Shown one piece after another: positions 718 through 51,863 of a DNA stretch of 64,000 nt. The notes under the pieces are model-generated. The model saw nothing but the letters and a program-made list of their open reading frames with translations. It was not told the DNA's origin and searched no databases. Position 1 is the first letter of the stretch; each line of letters begins with the position of its first letter. This DNA is from Utricularia gibba. Its lineage: Eukaryota; Plantae; Magnoliophyta. Where the stretch lies: NCBI GenBank assembly GCA_002189035.1, contig NEEC01000007.1, forward strand, positions 992,001 through 1,056,000, written 5' to 3'. The translations under genes were made by a program, and so were the position numbers.

Positions 718-2290
718 TCACCTCTGGAACTTTGAACCAGGAGGGGGATCATAAGTGTCTTGATTGATCCAGCTGAACATGTGCATAAAGGGGTTGGCTT
801 TTTCTCCCTTCTTCTCATTTCCGATCACTTCTTCCCAAACATTGGCATCCTCCAGATCCTTCATCACTTCCCAAACGCAGCTGTTGCACTTGAAACCTGA
901 CCCAAACCCTATCATCCACAACTTGTCTCCCCTTTTCAGCCTCCTTTCTGCTTCCATGTACCCGAGCACGTACCACAAGCTACTCGCGGACGTGTTCCCG
1001 AATCGATGAAGGCTCATCTTCGAGGGCTCCACGTCCTCATGGCTCAATCCTAATCCCTTCCTGATTTCCTCTATCACCGCCGTGCCGCCGGGATGCATGC
1101 AGAAGTGATCTATTCCGGCCTTGAAGTTCAATGTTGCCTTTTTCCTTGCGTGTTTCATTGCGAAGTACCTGTGTAGAAAATACATGAAACAGCATGCATA
1201 GATAGTTAAGACCAGAAAACAAGAAGCGTAACAGTACCTTATAAGCTCGGTGTAAGGCAGACATGTTTTGGCTATTACAGCTATGTTTTGTGTGAAGGCA
1301 CGTTTAGCAGTTTTGGGAAGGCTTTTATCGAGATAGAAGCCTTGTTTCCCTTGGCTGTCTTCCTTCTGCATGCCGCAGGTGTACGCTTCATCGCTGGCGC
1401 CTAAATGGGTGCGAACCAGGCACTTCAGTTGCAGTTTCGAACGGTTCTTCATCGCGGGTTTGTTCGTTAGCAGGATCACGCATCCGCCGGAACGGAACAG
1501 ACAGTTCGTCAGCATCATCGACTTGTCGTTTCCCGAGTACCTGCGAGGGTAGAACCATCTCGATATGATCCGCACAGAAATCCACATATTCTGCAATTCA
1601 TCTGTAGCTGAACAACAGCTTGACTAACCAGTTGGGCGCTATGGACTCGGATGTCACCACCAGGGCCATGGAGTTCCTGTGCGATTTGAAGAAGCTGGTG
1701 ACGAGGTTGATCGAGATCAAGCTCGCACTGCATCCCATCCCCGAGAGGTTGTACGACTTCACATCGTCTCTCATTTTGTACATGTTGATGATCCGCGATG
1801 TCAGAGATGGAGCGCACGAGAGCAGGGAGACGTTCACTACCAGTAGATCTATTTCCTTGGGACCAACCTGATACGATAACAAGAATGCTAATAACAAACT
1901 TTCTGTACTAAACCCAGAATTCCTATCTGTCACCTTAGTTTTCTCGAAAAGCTTGCTCAGGGTCTCCTTGAAGAACTCATCCATCTCCAAGATCCCATCT
2001 TCGAGGCTATGAGAGTTCTCCCGTCCGCCGATGATGTTTCTCGGGCCGTAGGAATCCTCTCCGATTCCAGAATTCACGATAGCTCGTAACATGAACTTGT
2101 ACTCTTGATGGCCCAGGTTGAGATTGCGAGCCACGATGCTGCCGCTAAGCTCAGTGTCGAGCTTACGATCGTCCGACGGCTTGTGACATTCGTAATGCAC
2201 CAGGTAACAACGTTGATCTCTTTCCCTACGAATGAAATACAATGACAGAACGAGAGCCCAAATGCATATCCCCAGCGTGATGAGCTCCAT
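718..2290 (-). CDS. KCS: 3-ketoacyl-CoA synthase (FAE1/KCS), KCS3/KCS12/KCS19-like; 4 exons (introns 1868-1933, 1541-1628, 1169-1237)
   Basis: Motifs NLSGMGCSAS (catalytic Cys), HFCMHPGG (His), RFGNTSASS (Asn) and GFGSGFKCNSCVW. The short N-terminus with one TM segment fits the KCS3/12/19 clade. Removing three GT-AG introns gives a continuous frame. Confidence 0.92.
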
Positions 2291-3972
2291 TCTGGGTTCT
2301 TCTTCCGTGTACTGGTGACCAAGACGGGCAAAAGTTGCACACTTTAAATGAAGGATCCGTAGTTGGTCTAAACTTCGGACTAAAAATCTCCAAGGTATTC
2401 GTGTAAGAAAGATTGTCTAAAAGTAGTGAAAAAGTAGCGATCTTTAAACATCGAAAACCGAATTCATATTCCAAATTCGGTTCGCATCAAACCCTTTCAT
2501 TTATAAGAAAAGATGGTGCGAGTTTTATAGGTATTGGTCCGATCACACACACTGTCATGCAGCATGCCATTGGTGGCGACAATTGAAAATTGAAAACATG
2601 GGGAGCCCGCAATCAAGAGGGTTGATCGGTTTTAGCATTTACAGAGCAGTCGGGTGCAGGAAGGACAGGAGGTTCCTGGTATTAAATGCTAGAAAACGTG
2701 GGATCCGTAAGAAGACAGCGGTGTTCCATAAATGCGCGTAGGGACCTTCAACAGAAAGTACTCCGAGAAGAAAACGGTTGCGAAATAAGCTCTCTGCGTC
2801 GGGTTCTCAACTCACCGCATTCAAAGCTCTGCTATTTGGTGGGTTTCGATGCAGTTGCACAAATTTAGTTCCATGGTTTACGTAGGAAAACTCGCAGCCT
2901 GTGCGAGTGGCATTCGCTTCATACAAACTAAGCTTGTCTGTCTGCGGTCACCAAAGGGCGACCTGAGAATAGTTGGGGCGCGCCAAACATCATAATGGAT
3001 CATGTACTTCAGACCGGAAGCATTGAATATGCAAAAAAGCAGACCCACGGCTCCATTCAAACCTATGTTTTTTTCACCTGCAACACTAACTGAGACTGCA
3101 CGGGTTACCTATCCATGAAAGTAGTCATCTTCTTTGTGTGAGAAAATGGGTGTGTGTTAAATTTCAACAGTTGGGGAGGCTGGCTTTTCAAAATCAGGCG
3201 CCATTACCGGCTTCACTAAGAACTTGGTCGTCAAAAGCCATCGCTGAATGGAGATTTCACCTGAAACACAAGGCGCAGGGAAGAAGAGAACACCACCAGG
3301 CCCAGGGTATGGTCGACACTCCCACGGGACCCGCCAAGATCCGATCAACACCGCCCATGGCGTATCGGCCGCACCGGCAACTACATCACAGACCTGTGTT
3401 GCCCCGACCAGAAAAAGTCTACAGAAACAATGTATTCATGATCATGTCCTCTTGATAACGTTGAATGGGCTGTCGGTGTGCTGGAAAACTAAACGCATAA
3501 AAATCTAGAAAGGTTTTTCCTTTTTAATAATAAATCCTTTTAGAATCAATTTCGAAAAACACTTCACAAGTATTAGAAAAAATTCTAAAAATGAATATTA
3601 TCAATAACCAAAAAATAAAAAAATTATAATTAGGTCCGAATTGGGCCAGGATCCAATTGAGCATATTATTGGGCTGTTCCGGACAGTCAGTTATTTTAAG
3701 TGTTGGGCTTCTCGGACGACCCAGGCTCATTAAATAGATAATGTGCTATTTTTTATATAAAATAATATTAAAAATGCAACCAACCACTACTGTTCTTTCT
3801 TTCTGGTGCCTGATGGCTGATGCCATTGGGTTAAAATCCCCTTTTGATAGCTCAAAGGAACAGAACGAGGGAGCGCTTGTTCTTACAGAAACCTCACACA
3901 GGCACAGGAAAGAAGCAGAATTTTTCACACTGGTTATTCTGACATTCTGCACTGCAGCCAAATCCATCTGAA

Positions 3973-4201
3973 TCAGGCAACCAGGACATAGAGGGCGTAG
4001 ATGATCCCAGGCAGGTACCCCAGTATCGTCAGCAGCAAGCAGATCCAAAACTCCACCTGCACAGAAATTCCCATCATCCCATGCTGCGCCCGATGGAGAA
4101 TACAGGTATTTGCCACTTACCCCGCATCCATATCTCAGAAATACGCCGACGGGGGGAAGCAGAATCGCCAGGATTACTTCAACAAACGTCGCGGTGCCCA
4201 T
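3973..4201 (-). CDS. RCI2: PMP3/RCI2/LTI6 hydrophobic proteolipid, 54 aa; intron 4057-4120
   Basis: Spliced translation is MGTATFVEVILAILLPPVGVFLRYGCG|VEFWICLLLTILGYLPGIIYALYVLVA*, with typical UPF0057 motifs and the conserved intron position. Confidence 0.95.
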
Positions 4202-4315
4202 CGAAGGATCAGTTGTCTCCTGGGATTTCGGATCATCAGTGGGTTGATAGATAATGGGGGGGGGGATGAATGAAAGGTGTCATCCTGTGAAGTTTTCCAT
4301 GAAGTGAAATACAAG

Positions 4316-16418: not shown

Positions 16419-18645
16419 CACATGGGATGTAAGGATGGGGTAGTTGTAACATTTGATTCCCATAAAAAGGAACAATGCCACGTCAGCAGAGGCAGCAATC
16501 GTACCTGTTTCAGTGCCATAAATGGTGAACCAGTACTGCTGCGACTCTATCCTGGTTATTATTTATTATTAATGAATTAAATAATTAATTAGATGCACAT
16601 TTTTTTTTATTCCAGAAAGGCAGCAGCAGCAGCATACTGTTAAATTATTTCTTTATAATATGCATGAGAGGCATCCCGGCCGCCACGCATTTATTGGACT
16701 GTTGTAGCTTGTATTTATTCCCTCACTAGCTCATCCCAACATGACAATAATTTAATGATAATACTTGCAATAAGCACGACAAGGTGGATTTTTCCCCCCT
16801 TTTTTTTAAATCACGTCTCCCCACCTACACATAGATGATAGATTCCTTCCCAATAATGGATCCCCCATTCCCTTCACCGGAGAAGGTAGAGATCAAGACA
16901 CGCGCCGCCCCGTGGAGGCGGAGCAGCAGCGTGCTGAGATGTGTGAGGCGCCGGCACTGATCGGAGTGTCGACGCACTAGGCCACACGTACGGACCGGAC
17001 GGTAACGGGATGGATGAACTTAGGGTAGCCTGCAGCAATAAATTTGGTTAGAAGCTACTTTAGTATCCGGTGGGTTGTTGACTAAACACAATCATTCAAG
17101 TGTTGGGTTGTCGTGGGTCAACGCGGTTCGGGTCCGGGTTAGCGTGCCGGTTCGGTGCTAGGGGAGAGGATCCAGCAGAGGAGAGACCGGATCTTTACAA
17201 AAAAGTAATGTTATTTAATTTTGTCGTGGTGGGCTATCCCTGAAGAGGGTACGCGCCCCATCCTGGCCGTCCAAAGCCGCAAGTTGCCGTTTTTTAACGC
17301 ACGTGATTCGATGGGGGACCCCACCCTGACAAATTTTTACTTGATTTGATTTGAATGGGATTCGATTCGATTTGATCTCTCCACCAAAAATTCACGTTTT
17401 CCGATCGAGACCGACGGCGGTGCTACTTCCCGGTCGATTGACCTAAACAATCTCCTCTCCTCGCTGTCTTGACCACCCACCCATGTTTAATTATTGGGGC
17501 CCAAAACACACTGTAATTGCATCGCGATCCAATTTATAGACAAATTAGTTATCATAAAAGCGGCTGAACCGAATCCCTTTTGGTTGGAACAGTTGAACCG
17601 GGAGGGGAGGAAGAAGGGCATGATTGGATTGGATTGGATTGAATTGGCTCTGGGATTCTTGTTGCTCACATGGCGGGGCGCCCACTCGGGTTTCCTTCCC
17701 GAGACAGGTGTGCCTGCCTGCACAGTGCGTAGTGCGTCGTAGATGGGTATGAATGTTTCCTTGTTTGTCTGCGTGCGTCGACGCGAATGATAGCGTGAAG
17801 CCGAGAGAAACAACATTGGAATGACGATGGTGACAGTGCAGACCGCAGGAAAAGGAAGGAAGCACTCGCGTGCCCATCTATCTATCTGTGTTGGCCCCGA
17901 CCGACCGCGACACCAACCGAGAATCCTCCCCCTCCAATGGGAAACGGCCGCGTCTCCCCACTCCATCGGATAAGCCAAGCCACACACCGAGATACGATGT
18001 TTTTATTTAAATTGGTAATAATCTTGATTGTACATATTTTAAAATGTCCACGTGGCTGTATTGAATATCTTAGAAAATTCCAAAATAGCCCCCGAATTAC
18101 AAACTTCGGGGACCGAAGAGAAGGGTCATGGATTATTAAATTCATGAATTTTTTAAATGGGGGAAAGAAAGAAATAAAGACAGAAATGTGGTTGGTTGGA
18201 GTCATGGATCACGGAGAATAATTCCTTCTCGTTCCAGAGGAAAAAAGAAAAGAGGAGCCTAAATGCCACGTGGGTCCCAGGAAACTGTGGCGATGTCGGC
18301 AAGCACATACGAGGTTTTAATATTTTTTGTATTGCCCAGAGCGACGTGGCTGCCTCTCCTCCCCAACTTTTCACATCTGGCCCGGGCTGGGCTGGGCTGG
18401 GCATCTCAGTTCCGACATGGGCTGCAAACAAGACGCAGCACTCATGGACCAAGGAACGCAAACAAGAGCGGGATGTGGAACTGGAATTGGATTAGATGAT
18501 AGTTTTGCCGGCACCTTGGAAGCCCCAATAAACTGAAACTAGTACATGAGATACATCATAGAAACTGAACAACGGAATTGTTTCTTCCCATCTTCACAGG
18601 CTGGATCTCAGATCGCCCTGGGGTTGAACGTTTTCCTCTGCAGTT

Positions 18646-22634: not shown

Positions 22635-24220
22635 ATGGCGTGTGTTGAGTCGGGGATCAGTGCGTTGGCAGAATTTGGATTGGGAATGGGGTTGGGGTTG
22701 GGAGAGCCCGCCATTGATGCAAATAAACTCAGCTACGAGATTTTCTCCATTTTGGAGACCAAGTTTCTGTTCGGTTATGATGGGGAAGGGGGTTCCAGAA
22801 GCCCAAGGATGTGGACCCACCAACGGTGCTGCAGATGGAGGAGGACGCTGCCGCCGCCGTGAAGAACCAGAGGGGGAAGGTTTGTATTCTCAGTCTTGAC
22901 GCTGTAGGGATGCGGGGGATTATTCCGGGGAAGGCGCTTGGTTATTTGGAAGAAGCGTTGAAGAGGAAATCGGGGAACCCGGAAGCGAGAATCGCTGATT
23001 ATTTTGACGTCGTCGCCGGGACTGGAGTAGGGGGGATCTTCGCGGCGATGTTGGTCGCCGGAAAGGCTGAAAAGGGTTTTCACGCAGATGATACGTGGAG
23101 ATTTCTAGCGGCGGAAGGGGACAAATTGTATGGTTCCGCCAAGAAACGGGGCGGATTTTTCAAACGGGCGTTCAAAAGATCAGGCAGAGGAGGCGGCGCC
23201 TCGCCGACCCCGATTTAGAGAACGTGTTGAAGTCGGCGTTCACCGATGAGAAAACCGGGCGTTTCTTGACGTTGAAAGATACCCTGAAGCCGGTGTTGAT
23301 CCCCTGCTACGACCTCTCCAGCGCAGCGCCCTTTCTGTTCTCACGCGCCGACGCGCTGGAAAACGACGGTTACGATTTCAACCTATGGGAAATCTGTCTT
23401 GCCACGGCTGCGGAGCCCGGAATATTCGATCCCATCACGATGAAATCAATCGACGGCCAGACACGGTGCGTCGGCATTGCCGGCGCGGTTGCGATGAGCA
23501 ATCCCACCGCGGCGGCCATCACCCATGTCCTCCACAACAAAGAGGAGTTCCCTTTCGTCCGCGGCGTCGAAGACATTTTAGTCCTCTCCCTCGGCGCCGG
23601 CGGACAACTCCTCGAAGGCAGCTTCGATTACGAGCAGGTCAAGAAATGGAAATCCAAAGACTGGGCACGACCGTTATCCCGAATCTCGAGCGACGGCGCC
23701 GGCGACCTCGTTGACCACGCCGTAGCCATGGCCTTCGGCCATAGCCGCAGCAGCAACTACGTCAGAGTCCAGGTAAACAAAAAGAACACATTCATTGCTG
23801 ATTGTTGTTATATCAAAAAGGAAACCTTTTCAGTTTCCTTCTTCTTCTCCGTTACAGAAATCCTCCTCTCGTTATACCCAGTAATTATTGCACTCTCTCC
23901 ATTATTCTGCCGCCCTGTCATCATCATCACCTTCTTCATGATTATTGCAGGCAAACGGGTCGGGTTTAGGCAGATGCGGGGTGGAATCAGACACCGACCC
24001 GAGCCAAAACAATGTGAAGATGTTAGTGGAAATGGGAGACAAAATGCTGAAGCAGAAGAATGTGGAATCAGTGCTTCTGGGAGGCAAGAGGATTGGAGAA
24101 GAGAGCAATGGGGAGAAGCTGGAGTGGTTCGCTGAGAAGCTGGTGCAGGAGCATCACAAGAGGGGTTCAAGAATCGCACCCACGGTTGCATTCAAGCAGC
24201 CTGTGAAACGAAACAATTGA
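22635..24220 (+). CDS. Patatin-like phospholipase, pPLAIII (PLP6/PLP7) group; intron 23773-23950; two apparent 1-bp frameshifts
   Basis: NKLSYEIFSILETKFLFGYD, RGKVCILSLD, ARIADYFDVVAGTGVGG (pPLAIII GxGxG), LTLKDTLKPVLIPCYDL, AMSNPTAAAITHVLHNKEEFPFVRGVEDILVLSLG and SNYVRVQ|ANGS. Confidence 0.9.
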
Positions 24221-28979: not shown

Positions 28980-29085
28980 GGGTGGGTTATGCTTGGCTCC
29001 TCATACGCCATCCATAGGAAACCATCGAAGTTCATCCATGGATTCTGCGTATGGCATACAGGGAGCCAGGCATATTCGTATTCAT
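28980..29085 (-). ncRNA. MIR160: MIR160 precursor hairpin
   Basis: Exact mature miR160 TGCCTGGCTCCCTGTATGCCA at 29072-29052 and the star strand GCGTATGAGGAGCCAAGCATA at 29008-28988 form a fold-back. A CT-rich leader and TATA-like CTATATTA (~29423-29430) lie upstream. Confidence 0.97.
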
Positions 29086-40332: not shown

Positions 40333-41414
40333 GTCTCTAAGAATAAAATCCATTCCAGATGATGAACCTACTACACAAGATTCAAATCAACCTGCAAAGC
40401 CCAAATCATCAGCATTAGTATCTCAAGCGCTCAACCTCAAGAGCCATACCAAATGATCTTTCAACGAAATCATCCAATCCAACGAAAAGTCAAACCCACG
40501 AATCTACACAGCTCTGCTCGCTTTTACAATGCATTTCAAACAAGATTGAAACAACAACAACAACAACAGGGTTTTACCAATTAAATGATCATCCATCCAC
40601 AATCTAAAGCCATTCCCTTTTAAGCTTAACATAAAGGCAGCACAAAACAAGCAAATCACCAATTAAAATACAAAAATAATTCACACAGTATTGAGAAACA
40701 AATATCAGATCGCGCACCCTCAAAATCAACGAATAAAATCACGGTAGGTGCCTCGATCCTTCACACAAAATTGATCATTTTGACGAAAAGAAAAACGAAG
40801 GAAAGAAACAAAAGTCAAACCCACAATCCACGAACGAAATGAGACCTTACAAATGGCAAACCTCTCCAGCAGAGAAAAATGGAGATCGGTGCAGTAGGAA
40901 CAAAGGTTTTGAAAAGTGCGAGGTTGTCAAAGCAAAGCAGTTGTTGGTTTGGTTTGGTGCTGAAACGACGACGTTTCAGTGAAAAACCACGACTAGTCCA
41001 CGCGTTCATGTCCTCGGCATGTGGACGCCCAATGTGTTCGTCAAACCCTTCTAGAGACAATAAGAAAACTATTACTTTATTCAATTGTGACGTAAATATA
41101 TTAAAATATAATTTAATATTACATTTTATTATTTTAAAAGATTTATTTTCCTTCTTCACATTGCCAAAAGCTCTATCTACACGCAATCCAGTGATGTTGG
41201 CTTGGGCCGAAACTTGAGGCTGGCCCAAAAGTGAGCCTGCAAATGTTTTGTATTTGAATTGCGGGAAGGGGGGTTTTCTTTCTCGGCGGGATGCGCAATT
41301 TTCCGATGGCGCCATTATTTCCCGCCTCTGAGCGTATCTATAAAACAACCACGGCGCGCGCTTTGCTTTGTCAACTGCATTCTGTAATTCACCCGCAGAT
41401 TGTCGATTCCAGAA

Positions 41415-42176
41415 ATGGTTTTGTCTTTGGGTCCTGGGAAGTTCTATGGTGGCAGCCTTCCACGGCCACGGTTCTACGGTGATGTTCGGTTTAACGATCA
41501 GAGAGTAGATCCGCCGCTGCCGGCGATGGATCCGCTCATGGCTTGGGCACGCGAGGCTCATTGGTCCATGGGCGGTCTCGGGTCGGAGCGACACCGTCTC
41601 CAGGGCAAGATCGAGGGTAAAATAGGGAATTTGGTGAAGCGCAAGGAGAGGGAGAAGAGTTCCGAGAAGAAACCGTCCAAAATCTCCACTGCGTCTCCCT
41701 GGGAAGAAGATGAGGGGGTTTTACATTCTCCGTCGCCGCCTCTCTCTCCGGTTTCGATTAAGAGGCGTAGAGTCGTCGGTTTGGTGGATGAGGCGGAGGT
41801 GCCTAGGGTAAAGCGTGAAGCGAGGAAATTGGGGAATGAATTCGATCGATCTGCCAAGGATAGTGGCATGAGATCCGAAAGTCGCAGTACTACGAATAAA
41901 AACTCCGATCCGAATACGATGCAGGCAAAGAGGAAAAGGGGGAAACTGATAAAGGGAGGGAAGGTAGTGGGAGGTGCCTTAGTCGAGGCGGCCCGAGCGT
42001 CAGAAGTTCGCCGAGGTTGGCAAGACGTCGTTCTGCAACGTAGAGTATTTTCTCTGGCAAAGCATCCACCGACTGAAGCTTCTTCTTCGCCAGCCTTCTC
42101 CCGGAGCCTCGCCATCCGAAACAACGAAAGCTCGGCGATCTGTGCTCGTTCCTCAAAGAATCTAGGGTTTAACTAG
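41415..42176 (+). CDS. Conserved plant protein of unknown function (N-terminal MVLSLGPGKFYG..PRPR family), single exon
   Basis: MVLSLGPGKFYGGSLPRPRFYGDVRFNDQRVDPP..AWAREAHWSMGGL..RLQGKIEG is a motif I recognise from conserved uncharacterised plant proteins. A basic low-complexity tail follows. Confidence 0.75.
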   Translation: MVLSLGPGKFYGGSLPRPRFYGDVRFNDQRVDPPLPAMDPLMAWAREAHWSMGGLGSERHRLQGKIEGKIGNLVKRKEREKSSEKKPSKISTASPWEEDEGVLHSPSPPLSPVSIKRRRVVGLVDEAEVPRVKREARKLGNEFDRSAKDSGMRSESRSTTNKNSDPNTMQAKRKRGKLIKGGKVVGGALVEAARASEVRRGWQDVVLQRRVFSLAKHPPTEASSSPAFSRSLAIRNNESSAICARSSKNLGFN

Positions 42177-42930: not shown

Positions 42931-44522
42931 TTAGCAATCTTCCAGAGGCTTGTCTGATATCCCATCGGAGGAACTCGGCGCCGCGGCGGCGGTTGCTGGA
43001 GAACTGGTGTTGGTGGTTGCTTTCTCTTTGCAGCTCATTTGCTGGGCTGTGAGAATCGGTTGACCAAACAAGACAAAAGCAGGGGCTCCGGGATCAGCTT
43101 CTTTCTTCCTGCAGATTTCTTCAACTTCCTCCGCCTCCGCCGCTGCCGGGGAATCATTGCATTTTATGGGAACCTGGGGTGGAAGCCCGAGGTGCGGATT
43201 CCTGTGTCGCTGTACGCCGGCTGCGGGAATGTTATCAGGGAAGCTACACAGAGGGCTGCTGGGACTCAGGGGATTGCCGATAAGCATCGGAAGATGAAGA
43301 GGAAACTCCAGTGAGTGATCCAGCAGTCGCGGACGCTTTACCACCGGAGGACGATGACCAATTTCAGGGATAACTGGATCTATTACAAGTTCAACTGCCC
43401 ATGGATTCACATGGTTTAGGTTTTGTAAGAAATCTGGCTCATCCCATGTTACCTACAAGTGAATTCAGTATCAATAACAGAGAAAAAGCTTCACTTGGGA
43501 GATGAATATACATTACAGATAGGGCACCTGAAGAAGTCTCCAGGGGGAATCAGGCCAATGGATTGGATCATGAATCCGAGGCGATGAAACAGTACCCATA
43601 AACCAACTTGTCCTCAGTGAATCCTCTGTTTCAAAAGCCATCTTAATTCTCATCCCAGAGCACCATTGGACAAACAGAGAAGCTCGTACAGTTGCAGCAG
43701 AGACCACGAACTCCGGTGTGCCGGCACGGGGATAATACACGATCTCGAAGGGTTGTCGATCCGTAGCCAGACGAACTGATTCCAGGACAGACTCAGCGCT
43801 TCTTCTTACGTGACCCCTTTTAACGGTGGTTCCAATATCACGAAGGAAATCAGGGAGCGCTGCTTTGTAAGAGGCCGGGTTAAGAAACGGAATCTCCTTC
43901 TTGGATCGTTTGATTCCTATATACAATTCCCCATTCTCCAATTTCACAAATACCACTGAATCGCCTGCAACAAGACGCTTCTTGTTCACGAAGGTGTTCC
44001 AACCGGTGGTTAATAGATGCCGCCGTGGGGTTCCTCTGTAAATGTGCCGGAATTTCCAAGTCACACTGTGGATATCCTTAGCCACAATGGTCTGAACTGG
44101 AGGTTCCACGGCGGTCCCCAACTTGGGAAAAATGGATTCAGCGCAGCATCTGGGAACAGATAAACCTCCCCATTGTTGGCATCCGATTGCGTTAACGTCT
44201 TCGAGAATGACTCCGTCTTCTTGTTTTCCCCATTTCCATCAAATGCAAGAACCCCATTACGGTCAACTGCGAAATCTAATTCACTCCCTCCAAAGGGGAT
44301 CAACCCAATTTCCGCATAAACCTCATCGTTCTCAGTATCTGCCAAATACCTAATGGAGGACACTGTACAAGGAACCAGCGGCCGAACCCTCGGAAAACCA
44401 CTGAAATCAACCTTCCCAAGAGCGTGCTCCGCGTGCCCTTGTGGGAAATAATACACCTTGGAGTTTTCCGGTGGAATCTGAGACACCCCACCGGCGCAGG
44501 CCGCCCACACCTCGGGATTCAT
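42931..44522 (-). CDS. ARF: Auxin response factor, ARF10/16/17 clade; lacks PB1 domain; intron 43453-43528; one apparent 1-bp frameshift at 44168-44171
   Basis: VWAACAGG..VYYFPQGHAEH, SFSKTLTQSDANNG, B3 domain KFRHIYRGTPRRHLLTTGW, YYPRAGTPEFVV, GMRIKMAFETEDSLRTSWFMGTV, LLQ|VTWDEPDLL and VLFGQPILT. The ORF stops at EDC*. Confidence 0.92.
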
Positions 44523-45319
44523 GTGTTCCCCCCGGCGAAGATAAAACTCTGCAGAAAACACCCCTCAAATCTCTAACAAAAAATCCAGAACCTGACCCAA
44601 TTGCTTTTCAAAATCCAACCCGAAAGTCAAATCAAAATAAATCTAAACTAGAAAGCCGGAAACAGAAGTGACACAAGAAAAAGAAACGAAAGGGCGGTCG
44701 TATTTATAGGGATACAATGCGCAAGAAAAACTGGTGACTGACATGGAAAGAGAACAGAAAAATGGGGACACGAGGGCAGGGAGAGTTTGAAAGTTACACG
44801 CATCGCTTTGGGGGAGGGAAACAGAGAGTTCACAGTTCAGAGTACCCCCAAGTCTACAGTACACACACAGTATCCAACCAGGTACGAAAACGAAGAACAG
44901 AAGCGACACCTGAAAGTTTCAGTCCTGCCGACCACAGGGTGGCACAGAGACTTACCCTGCCTTTGCCCGGTCCCCTATTTTATATACGGAAACATATTAT
45001 TCGTACATGAATAAAAATAAAAAATCGAATATTTGCTTCTTTTTTTATTACTAGAAAAATATTTGAAATACAAATAGAGATCTCTAATTTATTAAAATAT
45101 TATTTATTAATTTTTAATTATTGGAAAAATGCAAAGTCGTCATTGAGAATAAATACTACGTCGTTTTCATGACGGACCATTGGCACGCAAGAGTCACAAC
45201 CATTGTCCAGGTTCAAGATCATTAAGGTGGCCTTTTAGATGATTTTTATTAAAATAATATAATTATGGTTTAATAATCATTAATAGACTTCTAAGTTATT
45301 TAGTTGAATAATCGTTTTC

Positions 45320-47438: not shown

Positions 47439-49722
47439 CTAACCTGGCTTTGATCTTGACCCAAATGACCAGTGAGGTAGCAGAAGTCTTTGAGACGAAG
47501 AGCCGCCCAGTGAGGCGGCTTGAGAACGAGTAACCATCTCGACCATGGACGGGGTTTGATAGGACTGAACAAGGCTTGAAAAATCAGTAGAATCGCCTCT
47601 AGCTGTTGCCCTCTGCCAAGAATGTGAACTTAGTCCGGATAAAATGTATGCTCTTCCGGATGCTTCATAAACATTTCTGCTCGCCATTCTCTCCTGCATT
47701 TCCTTGAGCTCAGCATCAAGGGAAATGCAGAGCCTGTCATGTGATTTAGCTGAAACAGAGCTACCTATAACCCTTCGAATGTTTTCCAGTATGGAGACTG
47801 CACCAGCCATGTCTCCACTTTCAGCAGCAGCATTGGCTTGTGTCATAGCCTCTGCAGCTTGGATCCTGTTCCTTTGTCTATCCACTTCAATTGACACGCC
47901 CTGTTCCAAACGGACGTCGGTTCTCCCAATTCGAATGTCTCCACTTTCCACAGTCACCGGCAGCATTGTCAGCGGATCAGCATACACACATCTGACTCTC
48001 AGAAGGTATGTCTCATTATCCAGTGTTTCTTTAGGAATGTTTATGGAGATCAAGAAGTCCCTTTCTTCATCTGCATATAGATTTCCAACATCAATAATTC
48101 CTATACGTTGATTGGATAGGATACGGTTTGGGTAACTTCCCACTTTCATAGAAATAATATGGATTGCAGGGTGGCCACACTCAACTGTGACGGTCAAATC
48201 CTTCACCACAACACTCAGCAACCCTCCAATGCACTGAGCAAATGCATCCTGGATTACTGCTTCAGTCTCGATGAAGGAAAAGGTTCCTCCAGATATCTCA
48301 GATATTGTGTGCATCGCTGTTGGATCATGATCAGCTCCAAAGCCAAATGTATGAACGGGGATCTTGAAGCCCAATCTCTCACCTGATCGAACAGATAAGG
48401 GAAGAAGCAGCTCATAATTTGGTGAGTTGGTGCTCACAGGATTGTTGACAGTGTAAGTGTCTTGGCCGTCAGACAACAAGATTATGCTAGCAATTGGATT
48501 TTTTTCTTTCCTCTCTTCTATAATCTTGGCCCCCTTTCTCAAGCCTTCAGCAATATTAGTTCCTCCACTGGCAACAAGTGAGTTAACTGCTTGCAGGGCT
48601 TGCTGCCTCCCAGTTTCTGACATTCGACGCAGGGGGAAGATGCGGCGAGCTGTTGAAGAGAATGAGATCACGGCCAGCCTATCATTGAGGCCAAGATTCT
48701 GTATCACAAATCCCATTGCACGCTTCAGCAGTGCAAGCTTTGTCCCGGCCATGCTTCCGCTGGTATCAAGAACAGTGACAAGATCAACAGGAGCACGAGA
48801 CTTCTGAGACATGTTAGGAAACTGCAAATTGTTGCTGCTGGTGCTGAGCCACGAATTGGAACTCGGAGCCTTCAAATTAAGCAACACACTAAAGCTGTCA
48901 ACTTGGCTTGTTTTAGGAACAGTTGCAACTTCAGTGAATGTCCCAATACTGATCTTTCTCCGATCATGTAAGTCCTTCAGACCAGTTCCTGCAGAATCAG
49001 TTTTACGTTCTAGCGGCTCATCATCATCATATGTCACAGGCTCTGCGACTTGCAGTGCAGATGGCATATTCCTGCTTGAATTTGAACGAGGTGGCATTCG
49101 GCGGATAAACGTTATGACAGCATCGTCTTGAGCTCGATTCATGCCGGTGATCCTTCCCTCTTGCAATGGAGATCCATTACAAGGGCCTTGTAGGGGAACA
49201 TCCTTCCACTTTGCTCTGCAAACAGGGCATATTTTGTTTCCATGCTTCACGTTTGAAGTAATACATTGGAAATGAAAGGTGTGTGAGCATTCTGCCGTAA
49301 ATATGGCTTGCCCATTTCCAGGTCTCATTGATGTCAAGCATATAGAGCATATCTTCTGAAGAACACACGGAGAACATGTCAGAGAACAATCATCTTATGA
49401 AATGAAGAAACCCAAAATTGTTTCTTTTTTGCCTTCAAGCTACAAGTTCACATTCCAGAACAGAATCTCCGATACATCTCACATGTCAACAGAGGCAATA
49501 AGCAAGAAACCTAGATAAAGAGAGAGGAGAAAGGAAAACGACCTTTGAAGAGGATCTATCGGAGCTTTTGGAAGCTGACAGCGGCCCGTAGGATGAAAAG
49601 TCGGTCGCCTGAGACAACAAGGCGGCTTCCGACGGTGGCAAGGAGTGATACTCGTTATTGCTTCCGGTGAGACACCTATTCAACCCGAGTGCAGCCCTGA
49701 TTTTTCTCCATTTATCGCCCAT
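47439..49722 (-). CDS. RING-H2 + von Willebrand A domain E3 ligase (WAV3/WAVH/At5g60710 type); one intron (~49355-49542)
   Basis: CSICLTSMRPGNGQAIFTAECSHTFHFQCI..CPVCRAKW, RAPVDLVTVLDTSGSMAGTKL, IILLSDGQD and SGLSSHSWQRATARG. Confidence 0.92.
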
Positions 49723-51863
49723 TTCAATCCACCTTTAAGCAAGATTCATCCAAATAACAGCCTCCCTGAGAGAACCCCAGAATCAAAATTCCCAACTTTT
49801 CGAAAAGAAAACTTTTCAGCACAAAAGGCCGATTCCCCAAGAGATGTTCCTCTGGGTTCCCTTGATCGAAGCTGAAACAGGGGACGAAGAAGAGTTCGTT
49901 TCAAGCACGCATAACAAGAGTGGACGCAAACCCAGTTGAACCGCGGCTGCGTGAACTTTGAAGATTCCAATCGGGTAACCTCCAAACACAATAACTTTGC
50001 TTTTTCTACCAGAAAGAAAAAAAAAAAAAAACTTGTCTTCTCGTCACTCGGCAGCCAACGAAGAAAAAAGGTGAAATGGGGGAAAAGTAAACAGCGCACG
50101 GAAGGGAGGCCTGTTTCCACTACATAAAAATAAATGGCGTTAATGGGGAGACGTGAGCTGACCTTACGCTGCCCGCTTTCGAACTTTATGGCTTCGTACA
50201 TGTGCGTTTTGGCCCATCATTTTCCGACTGTGCTTCGGTGGATAACTCAAATTCAGCTCCAAGATTCTCCAATGGCTGACACCTACCCTCGGGTGAAGGA
50301 GAAGGTCGCATATTGTACTATTATTTATTCTCCCAATAATCAGCCATTTATCATTTTGGGAATACAAAGAAAAATTATATTTAAATTTCTTTTTAATGTT
50401 CACTTTCATAAACAGCCCATAACACGAATGCACGCCCACCGCAGCAAGATTCGATTTTTATTTCATTTCTCAATCATCATTTGCATATGTAATCATGGTA
50501 TTGGAGCATGCTGACAGCGTGGCAATCCTCTCATTTTCAGGACTTGTGGTTCTTTATCTGTATTCTGAATTCCCATGTCTGCTGTTGAGGCAGAGTCCTT
50601 GAACAAAATGGCATCATGCTTCAACTCCCTAGCAGATCTTTGGCCTATCTGTCATGCTGTCGATCCCAGCTGTTGTCCACACCCCCATCGCTCTCTGGGT
50701 CCAACTCGATCGAGTCTGTGAGCTACGTGGTCTAGATCGAGGTTGAGTCTGTGAGCAATCAACAGAAAGCTTCTTCCTTTTCTTTGTATACCCACCATGG
50801 GATTGATTCTATCACCAGTACAGGGTCTCCATGTGCTGCCTGCACCGGAGGAGATTGGTTGATCTGTTTGTTATTTGCTTGGAAACTATGGCAACTGCAT
50901 CAAAAGAGATTTGCAGTAAGGGGAGAGGAGAAGAGAAATGGCTCCCAAACAAGTGATGAAACTATGTTCCCAGATGTCAATGGTGGCCTCCCACAGTCAC
51001 CCCATTACAACAAACATTCATACCCCACTTGCTCCATCCCACTTCGTGCATATTTCTAGGAATTTCACAAAGTTGGGTAAAGAATCCCAGAACTTCGACC
51101 GTGAAGCCATTATACCAGACAGATCAGCTTGAAGTTTGTCAATATAACACAAACAAAATCGATGCAGTCATTCTATTGAAACTTAAACTGGAGCTGACGA
51201 AAAAATTTTGGAGCCTCAAAAGCAATTATTACACTTTAGACTACACGCCCTCACACGCAAAATGTTGAGTCACTACCCATGGAATGCACACCGATCTCCC
51301 TCATCTACGTTACCCTGAAATCCATGGAATCATCATCAAATCCCATCACACTATCATAAAAAATCCCATCCATGAACCTGCCAGACAACAGGTGAAGCTT
51401 GCCACACCACTAAAGTCATGAATACCAGTGTTTGTGATTGATGTAAGGGACGGTTCTGTATGTTTTCCAAAGAACACATTTCAGGCCTGAAGGAAACTAA
51501 ACTAGGCAAATAACATGGGCATTGATGATGCACAAGTTGTGGATAGTGGAGCTTCCCCCCTCAGCATTCACACTTTATCCCACTTTAACCCTCACAGCTT
51601 TTCAAAAGGAAAAGAAATACCCCAACATCAATATGAGGAAGAGGAACCGGCACCTTTTTATCTCGAATGACTCAAACCCCTAAAATCTAACGCACATTCA
51701 ACCCTTTACACATCAAATGCACACTCCTCAGTGCATTCCATCCTTCGATTTCACTTTTTCAATCCACAACATACATAAACTGCGGCCAAGACTCGTTTCG
51801 TACCGTCGCATAACAAGCCCACATGCAAGAAACTCACACAAAAGCTCCCAAGATAAACAGTAA

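What the first reader, a model, noticed from the sequence alone, without database searches (positions are those of the whole stretch)
43199..43219. ARF10/16/17-clade gene that has lost its miR160 site and PB1 domain, 14 kb from an intact MIR160
Seen: the expected site (complement TGGCATACAGGGAGCCAGGCA, normally encoding AGIQGAR) reads CGGCGTACAGCGACACAGGAA (AGVQRHR). That gives mismatches at miR160 positions 2, 7, 8, 11 and 21 plus a G:U at 17, so seed and cleavage positions are both hit. These are substitutions, not homopolymer artefacts. The ORF stops after the VLFGQPILT motif with no PB1 domain, and the DNA-binding region is divergent (GGGLSVPRCC). Knowledge: the miR160 site is deeply conserved in this clade, and engineered resistant ARF10/16/17 alleles cause strong developmental phenotypes. 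Inference: a natural miR160-immune, Aux/IAA-independent ARF paralogue that escapes both controls and is linked to a MIR160 locus. This is the best candidate here for novel regulatory wiring.
Basis: partly seen in the sequence, partly recalled or inferred. Interest (0 to 1): 0.75.

Follow-up and report, generated by a model that had tools for sequence, protein, structure and literature searches.

The report
ARF16-like gene without microRNA160 site
A fast-evolving plant auxin-response-factor gene of the ARF10/16 group, in a bladderwort-family genome, has lost both its microRNA-160 target site and its C-terminal interaction domain; it still looks like a working gene, but expression is unproven and this is a variant of a known kind.

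Summary
On the minus strand (44522..42931) lies a class-C ARF gene of the ARF10/16 clade, with B3 and ARF ancillary domains, one 75-nt intron and the VLFGQPILT motif. At the codons homologous to the miR160 site, 6 of 21 bases differ (miR160 positions 2, 7, 8, 11, 21, plus G:U at 17). The duplex energy is -24.8 against -45.4 kcal/mol for a perfect site. No PB1 remnant exists anywhere in the window. An intact MIR160 hairpin lies 14.1 kb away.

The frameshift at 44168-44171 is a one-base loss in a G run. A well-conserved patatin-like gene in this window carries two such losses, and earlier notes report the same pattern across this genome. It is therefore probably an assembly artefact.

The gene keeps 88% of near-invariant family columns against 31% of variable ones. 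It has no stop in 513 codons and evolves no faster than annotated relatives.

PB1-less class-C ARFs are already known. Complete erosion of the site is rare. Linkage to MIR160 has no shown meaning, and expression is untested.

The scan has unverified first-reader notes of similar eroded-site ARF10/16 genes elsewhere in this genome.

Verdict: probably a functional, miR160-insensitive, PB1-less ARF16-like paralogue, and a new variant of a known kind.

The parts
44701..44708 (-). TATAAATA box-like motif about 180 nt upstream of the first ATG
   Evidence: Read directly from the sequence. Weak evidence only.
44169..44522 (-). Coding piece 1: start codon (44522-44520), N-terminal dimerisation region and the start of the B3 domain (MNPEVWAACAGG...FSKTLTQSDANNG)
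   Evidence: ORF list and translation. Aligns with the N-termini of ARF10/16 homologues.
44168..44171 (-). G4 run holding a -1 frame break. A fifth G gives NNGGGLSVPR, which matches the family consensus NNGGGFSVPR. Probably an assembly artefact.
   Evidence: In-window control in the patatin-like gene. Earlier notes on the same genome.
43528..44166 (-). Coding piece 2: the rest of B3, the class-C insertion and the ARF ancillary domain, ending ...SPWRLLQ
   Evidence: Pfam B3 3.5e-17 and ARF_AD 7.3e-21. Best relatives are 55-67% identical. The TGTC-contacting motif RGTPRRH is kept (PMC12002309).
43453..43527 (-). 75-nt GT..AG intron at the conserved class-C position, between LLQ and VTWDEPD
   Evidence: Sequence. 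Homologue ORFs begin at the same point.
42931..43452 (-). Last exon: divergent middle region, fossil miR160 site, LFG motif, a 37-residue tail and the stop codon (42931-42933). No PB1.
43199..43219 (-). Degenerate miR160 target site (6 of 21 bases changed; encodes AGVQRHR instead of AGIQGAR)
   Evidence: penalty 7.5, duplex -24.8 against -45.4 kcal/mol. Homologous position shown.
43033..43086 (-). Conserved FVLFGQPILT (LFG-type) motif region, the last conserved element before the stop
   Evidence: tblastn with homologue C-termini hits only this stretch.
28987..29075 (-). MIR160 precursor hairpin. The mature miR160 at 29052-29072 is identical to the canonical sequence.
   Evidence: Rfam RF00247, 71.4 bits, E = 5.9e-14. 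Exact match. Fold z = -6.1.

Best explanation
This is a lineage-specific, fast-evolving paralogue of the ARF10/16 (class C) auxin response factors in a Lentibulariaceae (bladderwort-family) genome. It has lost two things. One is the whole PB1 oligomerisation domain, by deletion at the point where PB1 would begin. The other is functional complementarity to miR160, through six substitutions in the 21-nt site.

The coding sequence is most likely intact in the living plant. The single frame break is a one-base loss in a G run, of the kind this assembly makes systematically.

The protein would keep a class-C DNA-binding domain (B3 with the R-P-R DNA contacts, dimerisation and ancillary parts) and the LFG-type motif of the middle region. 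I infer that it binds AuxRE-type sites and acts as a PB1-less class-C regulator, probably a repressor or competitor. Its mRNA would not be cleaved by miR160, so its dosage would be set by its own promoter.

Shown here: gene anatomy, clade, loss of the site, loss of PB1, long-term constraint, and the artefact signature. Inferred: transcription, DNA binding, repressor activity, and insensitivity to miR160 in vivo.
For: - Domains: B3 and ARF_AD.
- Clade: placed inside the angiosperm ARF10/16 clade (SH-aLRT 97), not the ARF17 clade, and weakly with Genlisea P0014.
- Site: mismatches at miR160 positions 2, 7, 8, 11 and 21, penalty 7.5, duplex -24.8 against -45.4 kcal/mol. There is no better site in the transcript or the window.
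- PB1: no remnant.
- Constraint by column: 95 of 108 near-invariant columns are kept (88%), against 64% of intermediate and 31% of variable columns. Most changes at invariant columns are conservative.
- Constraint by codon: pN is 0.24-0.35 against pS 0.76-0.86. There is no stop in 513 codons, whereas neutral simulation leaves 5% of sequences stop-free at 12% amino-acid divergence and 0.75% at 20%.
- Rate: not faster than the annotated Genlisea and Andrographis ARF16-like genes. The neighbouring WAV3-like gene shows the same lineage-wide acceleration and groups with Genlisea.
- Frameshift: a -1 loss in a G4 run. Patatin-like protein 6 in this window, 82% identical to Sesamum in its core, has two -1 shifts in G5 and C4 runs. 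Many earlier notes report the same signature in this genome.
- Literature: ARF16 is duplicated in Utricularia gibba and both copies are expressed in U. vulgaris (PMC4358910).
Against: - No transcript, small-RNA or degradome data for this species could be reached. The protein databases hold neither this genome nor any close relative.
- If the frameshift is real, it cuts the B3 domain in its DNA-binding loop and the gene is dead.
- Retention of near-invariant columns (88%) is at the low end of the family, where 91-100% is typical. An invariant Phe is Leu (GGGLSVP) and LDY is LGT.
- The middle region is only about 30-39% identical to any relative.
- Selection was measured over the whole history of the gene, so a recent loss of function cannot be excluded.
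Confidence: 0.55

Rival explanations
1. Decaying duplicate or pseudogene. After duplication this copy came under relaxed selection, lost PB1 and the miR160 site as part of general decay, and is now dead. Either the frameshift is real or the gene is no longer transcribed.
For: - A frame break lies inside the B3 DNA-binding loop.
- Its retention of invariant columns is the lowest in the set, tied with P0033.
- There are radical changes at some conserved positions: D to G, G to S, V to P.
- The middle region is very divergent.
- Two conserved regulatory or interaction features are both gone.
Against: - It is the only lesion in 513 codons, and it is a -1 loss in a G run in an assembly that demonstrably makes such errors (leads).
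- Retention falls steeply from conserved to variable columns (88%, 64%, 31%).
- pN is far below pS.
- The rate is not elevated against annotated relatives of the same family.
- The intron borders, start codon, TATA-like box and LFG motif are all intact.
Confidence: 0.3
2. The gene is still under miR160 control through the degenerate site, by translational repression or weak cleavage, or the site acts as a non-cleavable decoy for miR160.
For: 15 of 21 bases still match, and the 3' half of the site (miR160 positions 12-20) pairs continuously apart from one G:U.
Against: - Mismatches at positions 2, 7 and 8 break the seed, and position 11 breaks the cleavage site.
- The penalty of 7.5 is above the usual cut-offs of 3-5.
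- The duplex energy is 55% of the perfect duplex.
- Known decoys pair strongly on both sides of a central bulge, and this site does not.
Confidence: 0.05
3. The 14-kb linkage to MIR160 reflects a functional cis-relationship, such as co-regulation or a local feedback unit between this ARF and the miRNA gene.
For: - Proximity alone. For a compact genome with a few MIR160 loci and several class-C ARFs, my rough estimate is about a 1% chance that a pair falls within 14 kb.
- In Marchantia, MpARF3 activity promotes MpMIR160 expression (PMC10721683).
Against: - At least three unrelated genes lie between them: MLO-like, tetraspanin and others.
- miRNAs act in trans.
- No MIR160 lies within 10 kb of the ARFs in Andrographis, Genlisea or Cuscuta.
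- The scan looked at many features, so one such coincidence is expected.
Confidence: 0.04

Closest known systems
Arabidopsis ARF17 (class C, naturally PB1-less)
   Same: A class-C DNA-binding domain, no PB1 domain, and a short C-terminus after the LFG-type motif.
   Different: ARF17 keeps a functional miR160 site, and resistant versions cause strong phenotypes (PMC10721683). The gene here falls in the ARF10/16 clade, not the ARF17 clade, and its site is eroded.
ARF10/ARF16/ARF18-type class-C ARFs (e.g. Genlisea aurea EPS66575 = P0014, Vitis CBI16322 = P0018)
   Same: Same clade, same intron position, and the same DBD motifs (YFPQGHAEH, TLTQSDANNGGG, RGTPRRHLLTTGW, KMAFETEDS, SPWRLLQVTWDEPD, LFGQPILT).
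   Different: Those proteins keep the QGAR-coding miR160 site and a PB1 domain. Genlisea has a single G:U in the site. The gene here has lost both.
PB1-less ARF10/16-type proteins of other asterids and rosids (Rutidosis XP_071732388 = P0009, Prosopis XP_054803276 = P0157)
   Same: They end 38-50 residues after the LFG motif without PB1.
   Different: They keep the IQGAR/MQGAR peptide that marks the miR160 site.
Andrographis paniculata ARF16-like (XP_051152960 = P0161) and Cuscuta epithymum ARF (P0012)
   Same: Divergent ARF10/16 paralogues with naturally weakened miR160 sites. Andrographis has 3 mismatches (positions 9, 11, 21) and Cuscuta has 2 (positions 10, 21).
   Different: Their erosion is partial and the seed is intact. 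Andrographis P0161 keeps PB1 by motif. For the 694-aa Cuscuta P0012 my PB1 motif search found no match, although it has a long C-terminus.
Engineered miR160-resistant mARF10/mARF16/mARF17 alleles
   Same: The mRNA is no longer complementary to miR160.
   Different: Those alleles carry silent changes in otherwise unchanged proteins, and they are expressed in plants that still need the regulation. Here the protein itself has changed (GA to RH) and the whole gene has diverged.

Membership tests
Auxin response factor (ARF) family | B3 DNA-binding domain of the ARF type | tested here: met
   Pfam PF02362, E = 3.5e-17, on piece 2 (profile positions 16-100). Profile positions 1-15 lie in piece 1 (FSKTLTQSDANNG).
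Auxin response factor (ARF) family | ARF ancillary/dimerisation domain flanking B3 | tested here: met
   Pfam PF06507, E = 7.3e-21. The N-terminal dimerisation-domain motifs WAACAGG and YYFPQGHAEH align with the family.
Auxin response factor (ARF) family | TGTC-contacting residues (AtARF1 R181, P184, R186; PMC12002309) | tested here: met
   The motif FRHIYRGTPRRHLLTTGW is unchanged.
Class C ARF, ARF10/16 subclade | Phylogenetic placement with ARF10/16/18-type proteins rather than the ARF17 type | tested here: met
   Quick ML tree on piece 2. It falls inside a 20-row ARF10/16 clade (SH-aLRT 97), and the ARF17-like clade is separate (99). The terminal branch is long (1.1).
Class C ARF, ARF10/16 subclade | Glycine at the AtARF1-H136 position (NNGGG loop) | tested here: inconclusive
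   The loop is present, but the -1 frame break lies inside its codons. With one added G it reads NNGGG like the family.
Class C ARF, ARF10/16 subclade | miR160 target site in the middle region (encoding xQGARx) | tested here: not met
   6 of 21 bases are changed and the penalty is 7.5. Of 31 class-C relatives with a middle region, 26 keep xQGARx exactly and the other five show single-residue variants.
Class C ARF, ARF10/16 subclade | C-terminal PB1 domain | tested here: not met
   The stop comes 37 codons after ILT. tblastn finds no PB1 at E up to 50 anywhere in the window. Pfam is not sensitive to class-C PB1, so tblastn was used.
Class C ARF, ARF10/16 subclade | LFG-type motif (xLFGQPILT) before the C-terminus | tested here: met
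   FVLFGQPILT lies within 43033-43086.
MIR160 (Rfam RF00247) | Hairpin with canonical mature miR160 on the 5' arm | tested here: met
   71.4 bits against a gathering score of 48. Exact 21-mer. MFE -43.2 kcal/mol, z = -6.1.
Pseudogene | Disabling lesions that are real, with a neutral substitution pattern | tested here: inconclusive
   There is one -1 lesion, of the artefact type proven in this window. There are no stops, and the substitution pattern is far from neutral. Recent inactivation cannot be excluded without reads or transcripts.

The most novel reading that the evidence does not exclude
The ancient miR160-ARF10/16 module is being taken apart in this bladderwort-family lineage. Several ARF10/16 paralogues, this one and others flagged elsewhere in the genome, would have shed their miR160 sites and PB1 domains independently or in series, while MIR160 itself is kept for a reduced target set. 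This might be linked to the loss of roots and the root cap, the tissue where ARF10/16 and miR160 act in Arabidopsis. This copy would then be a naturally deregulated class-C ARF that selection tolerates or uses.
Probability: 0.15. Interest if true: 0.7.

Novelty: new variant of a known kind. Interest (0 to 1): 0.45.

Why it matters
The miR160-class C ARF pair is one of the oldest known plant miRNA-target modules, conserved from liverworts to angiosperms (PMC10721683). Breaking it artificially gives strong developmental defects.

A natural ARF10/16 paralogue that is kept by selection yet has fully lost the site would show how such a module can be escaped after duplication. It would do so in a lineage with a highly reduced body plan and genome.

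It would also give a ready-made natural 'resistant allele' to compare with site-bearing paralogues. The value is limited until expression and the true state of the G run are known. PB1 loss by itself is not new.

Tried and rejected
1. Close relatives. The word search with the last exon gave only 33-36% identical hits. The full HMMER search with the DBD piece gave at most 67% identity. The neighbouring WAV3-like gene gave at most 72%. So neither this genome nor a close relative is in the protein collections. Orthologue-based dN/dS and transcript evidence were out of reach.

2. Synteny. The Sesamum WAV3-like locus shares only that gene, with no ARF beside it.

3. Pairwise dN/dS. Against Genlisea, Andrographis and Cuscuta the synonymous sites are saturated (pS 0.76-0.86). 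Only the contrast between pN and pS is usable.

4. Pfam for PB1. It misses PB1 even in class-C proteins that have it, so tblastn was used instead.

5. Other apparent frame breaks. They turned out to be introns or non-coding: the KCS gene near 1533-1625, an RCI2-like gene near 4256, and others with no family hit.

6. Literature. I found no description of a natural class-C ARF with a lost miR160 site. That is an absence in the searched library only.

7. ARF17 membership. Rejected by the tree.

8. Target-mimic reading. Rejected because the seed is mismatched.

9. Joined model. I did not search the joined spliced model. In one search the codons of the three pieces were pooled inside a script, only to count stop-creating mutations.

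Full report
**What is there**

The window is plant nuclear DNA. On the minus strand between 44522 and 42931 lies an auxin response factor gene. It consists of these parts:
- The first ATG is at 44522-44520, with a TATAAATA-like box about 180 nt upstream.
- An N-terminal piece runs to 44169 (MNPEVWAACAGG ... FSKTLTQSDANNG).
- A one-base frame break sits in the G4 run at 44168-44171.
- A second piece runs from 44166 to 43528. It carries most of the B3 domain (Pfam PF02362, 3.5e-17) and the ARF ancillary domain (PF06507, 7.3e-21).
- A 75-nt GT..AG intron (43527-43453) sits at the position conserved in class-C ARFs.
- The last exon (43452-42934) ends in a stop at 42931-42933.

Adding one G to the run gives NNGGGLSVPR, which matches the family consensus NNGGGFSVPR with the right number of glycines.

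**The observation**

The reverse complement of 43199-43219 is CGGCGTACAGCGACACAGGAA. Against the perfect miR160 target it has six changes.

A 15/21 match alone is not significant. Shuffled windows give about one such match. The stretch, however, sits at the codons that align with the AGIQGAR/AGMQGAR peptide of every relative, so it is the fossil of the site.

Under a psRNATarget-type scheme the penalty is 7.5, where usual cut-offs are 3-5. The duplex energy is -24.8 kcal/mol against -45.4 for a perfect site. No better site exists in the transcript or in the window.

The ORF stops 37 codons after VLFGQPILT, just where PB1 would begin. tblastn with the PB1-bearing C-termini of ten relatives finds only the LFG motif (43033-43086) and nothing PB1-like anywhere in the 64 kb. 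A convergent gene ends about 700 bp further on. PB1 was therefore deleted, not merely cut off by a stop.

MIR160 is real. Rfam RF00247 scores 71.4 bits at 28987-29075 (-), the mature sequence is canonical, and the hairpin has z = -6.1.

**Whose genome, and how fast it evolves**

The neighbouring WAV3-like RING/vWA gene (47439-49337, minus) is at best 72% identical to Lamiales proteins. In a tree it groups with Genlisea aurea (SH-aLRT 99). Both have terminal branches four to five times the median. They also share derived C-terminal residues.

The window therefore comes from a Lentibulariaceae genome other than G. aurea. The family is known for elevated substitution rates (PMC4358910). Neither this genome nor a close relative is in the protein collections.

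**Is the frameshift real?**

Earlier notes of this scan report systematic one-base losses in G/C homopolymers all over this genome. I tested that idea in my own window.

The patatin-like protein 6 gene (22635-24211, plus strand) is collinear over its full length with the Sesamum, Handroanthus and Genlisea proteins, at 82% identity in the core. It switches frame 3 to 2 to 1 at a G5 run (22788-22792) and a C4 run (23208-23211), with no room for introns. It then has one genuine 175-nt intron.

So all three frame breaks seen in conserved genes of this window are -1 losses in G/C runs. I put the chance that the ARF break is an assembly artefact at about 85%.

**Is the gene under selection?**

Aligned piece by piece to 19 ARF10/16-type proteins, the gene keeps:
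- 95 of 108 near-invariant columns (88%);
- 64% of intermediate columns;
- 31% of variable columns.

The changes at invariant columns are mostly conservative: L to V, F to L, V to I, R to K, S to N, A to S. The TGTC-contacting R-P-R of RGTPRRH is unchanged (PMC12002309).

Non-synonymous differences (pN 0.24-0.35 in the DBD) are far from the saturated synonymous ones (pS 0.76-0.86).

There is no stop in 513 codons. Under simulated neutral drift, only 5% of sequences stay stop-free at 12% amino-acid divergence, and 0.75% at 20%. For that count the codons of the three pieces were pooled in a script.

Relative-rate tests show the gene is no faster than the annotated ARF16-like genes of Genlisea and Andrographis. 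It is faster than those of Cuscuta, Rutidosis and Trapa.

The gene has therefore been under purifying selection for most of its history, and its long branch fits the lineage. A very recent death cannot be excluded.

**Where it belongs**

A tree on the DBD piece places it inside the angiosperm ARF10/16 clade (SH-aLRT 97), apart from the ARF17-like clade. It sits weakly next to Genlisea P0014. That Genlisea gene keeps both a near-perfect site (one G:U) and PB1. On this placement the two losses are younger than the split from Genlisea, or they belong to a lineage-specific duplicate.

ARF16 is reported as duplicated in Utricularia gibba, with both copies expressed in U. vulgaris (PMC4358910).

**How unusual is it?**

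PB1-less class-C ARFs are well known:
- Arabidopsis ARF17 (bioRxiv 10.1101/129122);
- the whole ARF17-like clade in my sample;
- ARF10/16-type proteins of Rutidosis and Prosopis.

Loss of the site is rarer. Of 31 class-C relatives with a middle region, 26 keep xQGARx exactly. The other five show single-residue variants: QSAR in the two Andrographis isoforms, QEAR in Cuscuta epithymum, and QGAK, EGAR and RGAK in three unnamed representatives. At the DNA level Andrographis has 3 mismatches (positions 9, 11, 21) and Cuscuta epithymum 2 (positions 10, 21).

Partial erosion therefore occurs in divergent paralogues elsewhere. The six-change, seed-broken state here is the most extreme I saw. I found no paper describing a natural class-C ARF with a lost site.

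**Mechanism proposed**

Shown: a class-C DBD with intact DNA contacts, the LFG-type motif, no PB1, and no usable miR160 site.

Inferred: the protein binds AuxRE-type sites as a PB1-less class-C regulator, probably a repressor or competitor. Its mRNA escapes miR160, so its level depends on transcription alone.

C-class ARFs are thought to work largely outside Aux/IAA signalling (PMC12002309). The PB1 loss therefore changes oligomerisation more than it changes 'auxin control'.

The 14-kb linkage to MIR160 has no support as a functional feature. Several genes lie between the two loci, miRNAs act in trans, and no MIR160 lies within 10 kb of three relatives' ARFs.

**What I could not do**

- No reads, transcripts or small-RNA data were reachable.
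- The joined spliced protein was not searched.
- Other ARF10/16-like loci with eroded sites in this genome (earlier first-reader notes) could not be inspected.

**Verdict**

- Most likely (0.55): a functional, miR160-insensitive, PB1-less ARF16-like paralogue.
- Main rival (0.30): a dying duplicate.
- Class: a new variant of a known kind, of moderate interest.

Noticed in passing
window 22635-24211 (+): The patatin-like protein 6 (pPLAIII-type) gene is collinear with its homologues. It is broken by two -1 frame shifts, at a G5 run (22788-22792) and a C4 run (23208-23211), and then has a real 175-nt intron (23779-23953). This is a clear case of the assembly's loss of bases in G/C homopolymers.
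   Followed up: yes
window 47439-49726 (-): A WAV3-like RING/vWA E3 ligase gene groups with Genlisea aurea (SH-aLRT 99) and shares derived C-terminal residues with it. Both have very long branches, which places the genome in Lentibulariaceae.
   Followed up: yes
L002:11992-12012 and L004:12037-12057: Annotated ARF16-like genes of Andrographis paniculata and Cuscuta epithymum carry naturally weakened miR160 sites. Andrographis has 3 mismatches (positions 9, 11, 21) and Cuscuta has 2 (positions 10, 21). In both, positions at or next to the cleavage site (10/11) are hit.
   Followed up: partly
window 718-2290 (-): A KCS (FAE1-type condensing enzyme) gene is split into two ORFs by a short GT..AG intron near 1533-1625, not by a frameshift. 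KCS genes are usually intron-poor.
   Followed up: partly
window about 3750-4300 (-): A small RCI2/PMP3-like membrane protein gene with one intron lies next to a 10-base G/C homopolymer at 4256-4265.
   Followed up: no
window 41400-42176 (+) and 40815-41594 (-): Long overlapping ORFs on both strands have no Pfam match. The plus-strand one converges on the ARF 3' end and leaves only about 700 bp between the two genes.
   Followed up: no
window 16669-16689 (+): A second 15/21 match to the canonical miR160 target sequence. It is at chance level and not in a recognisable ARF context.
   Followed up: no
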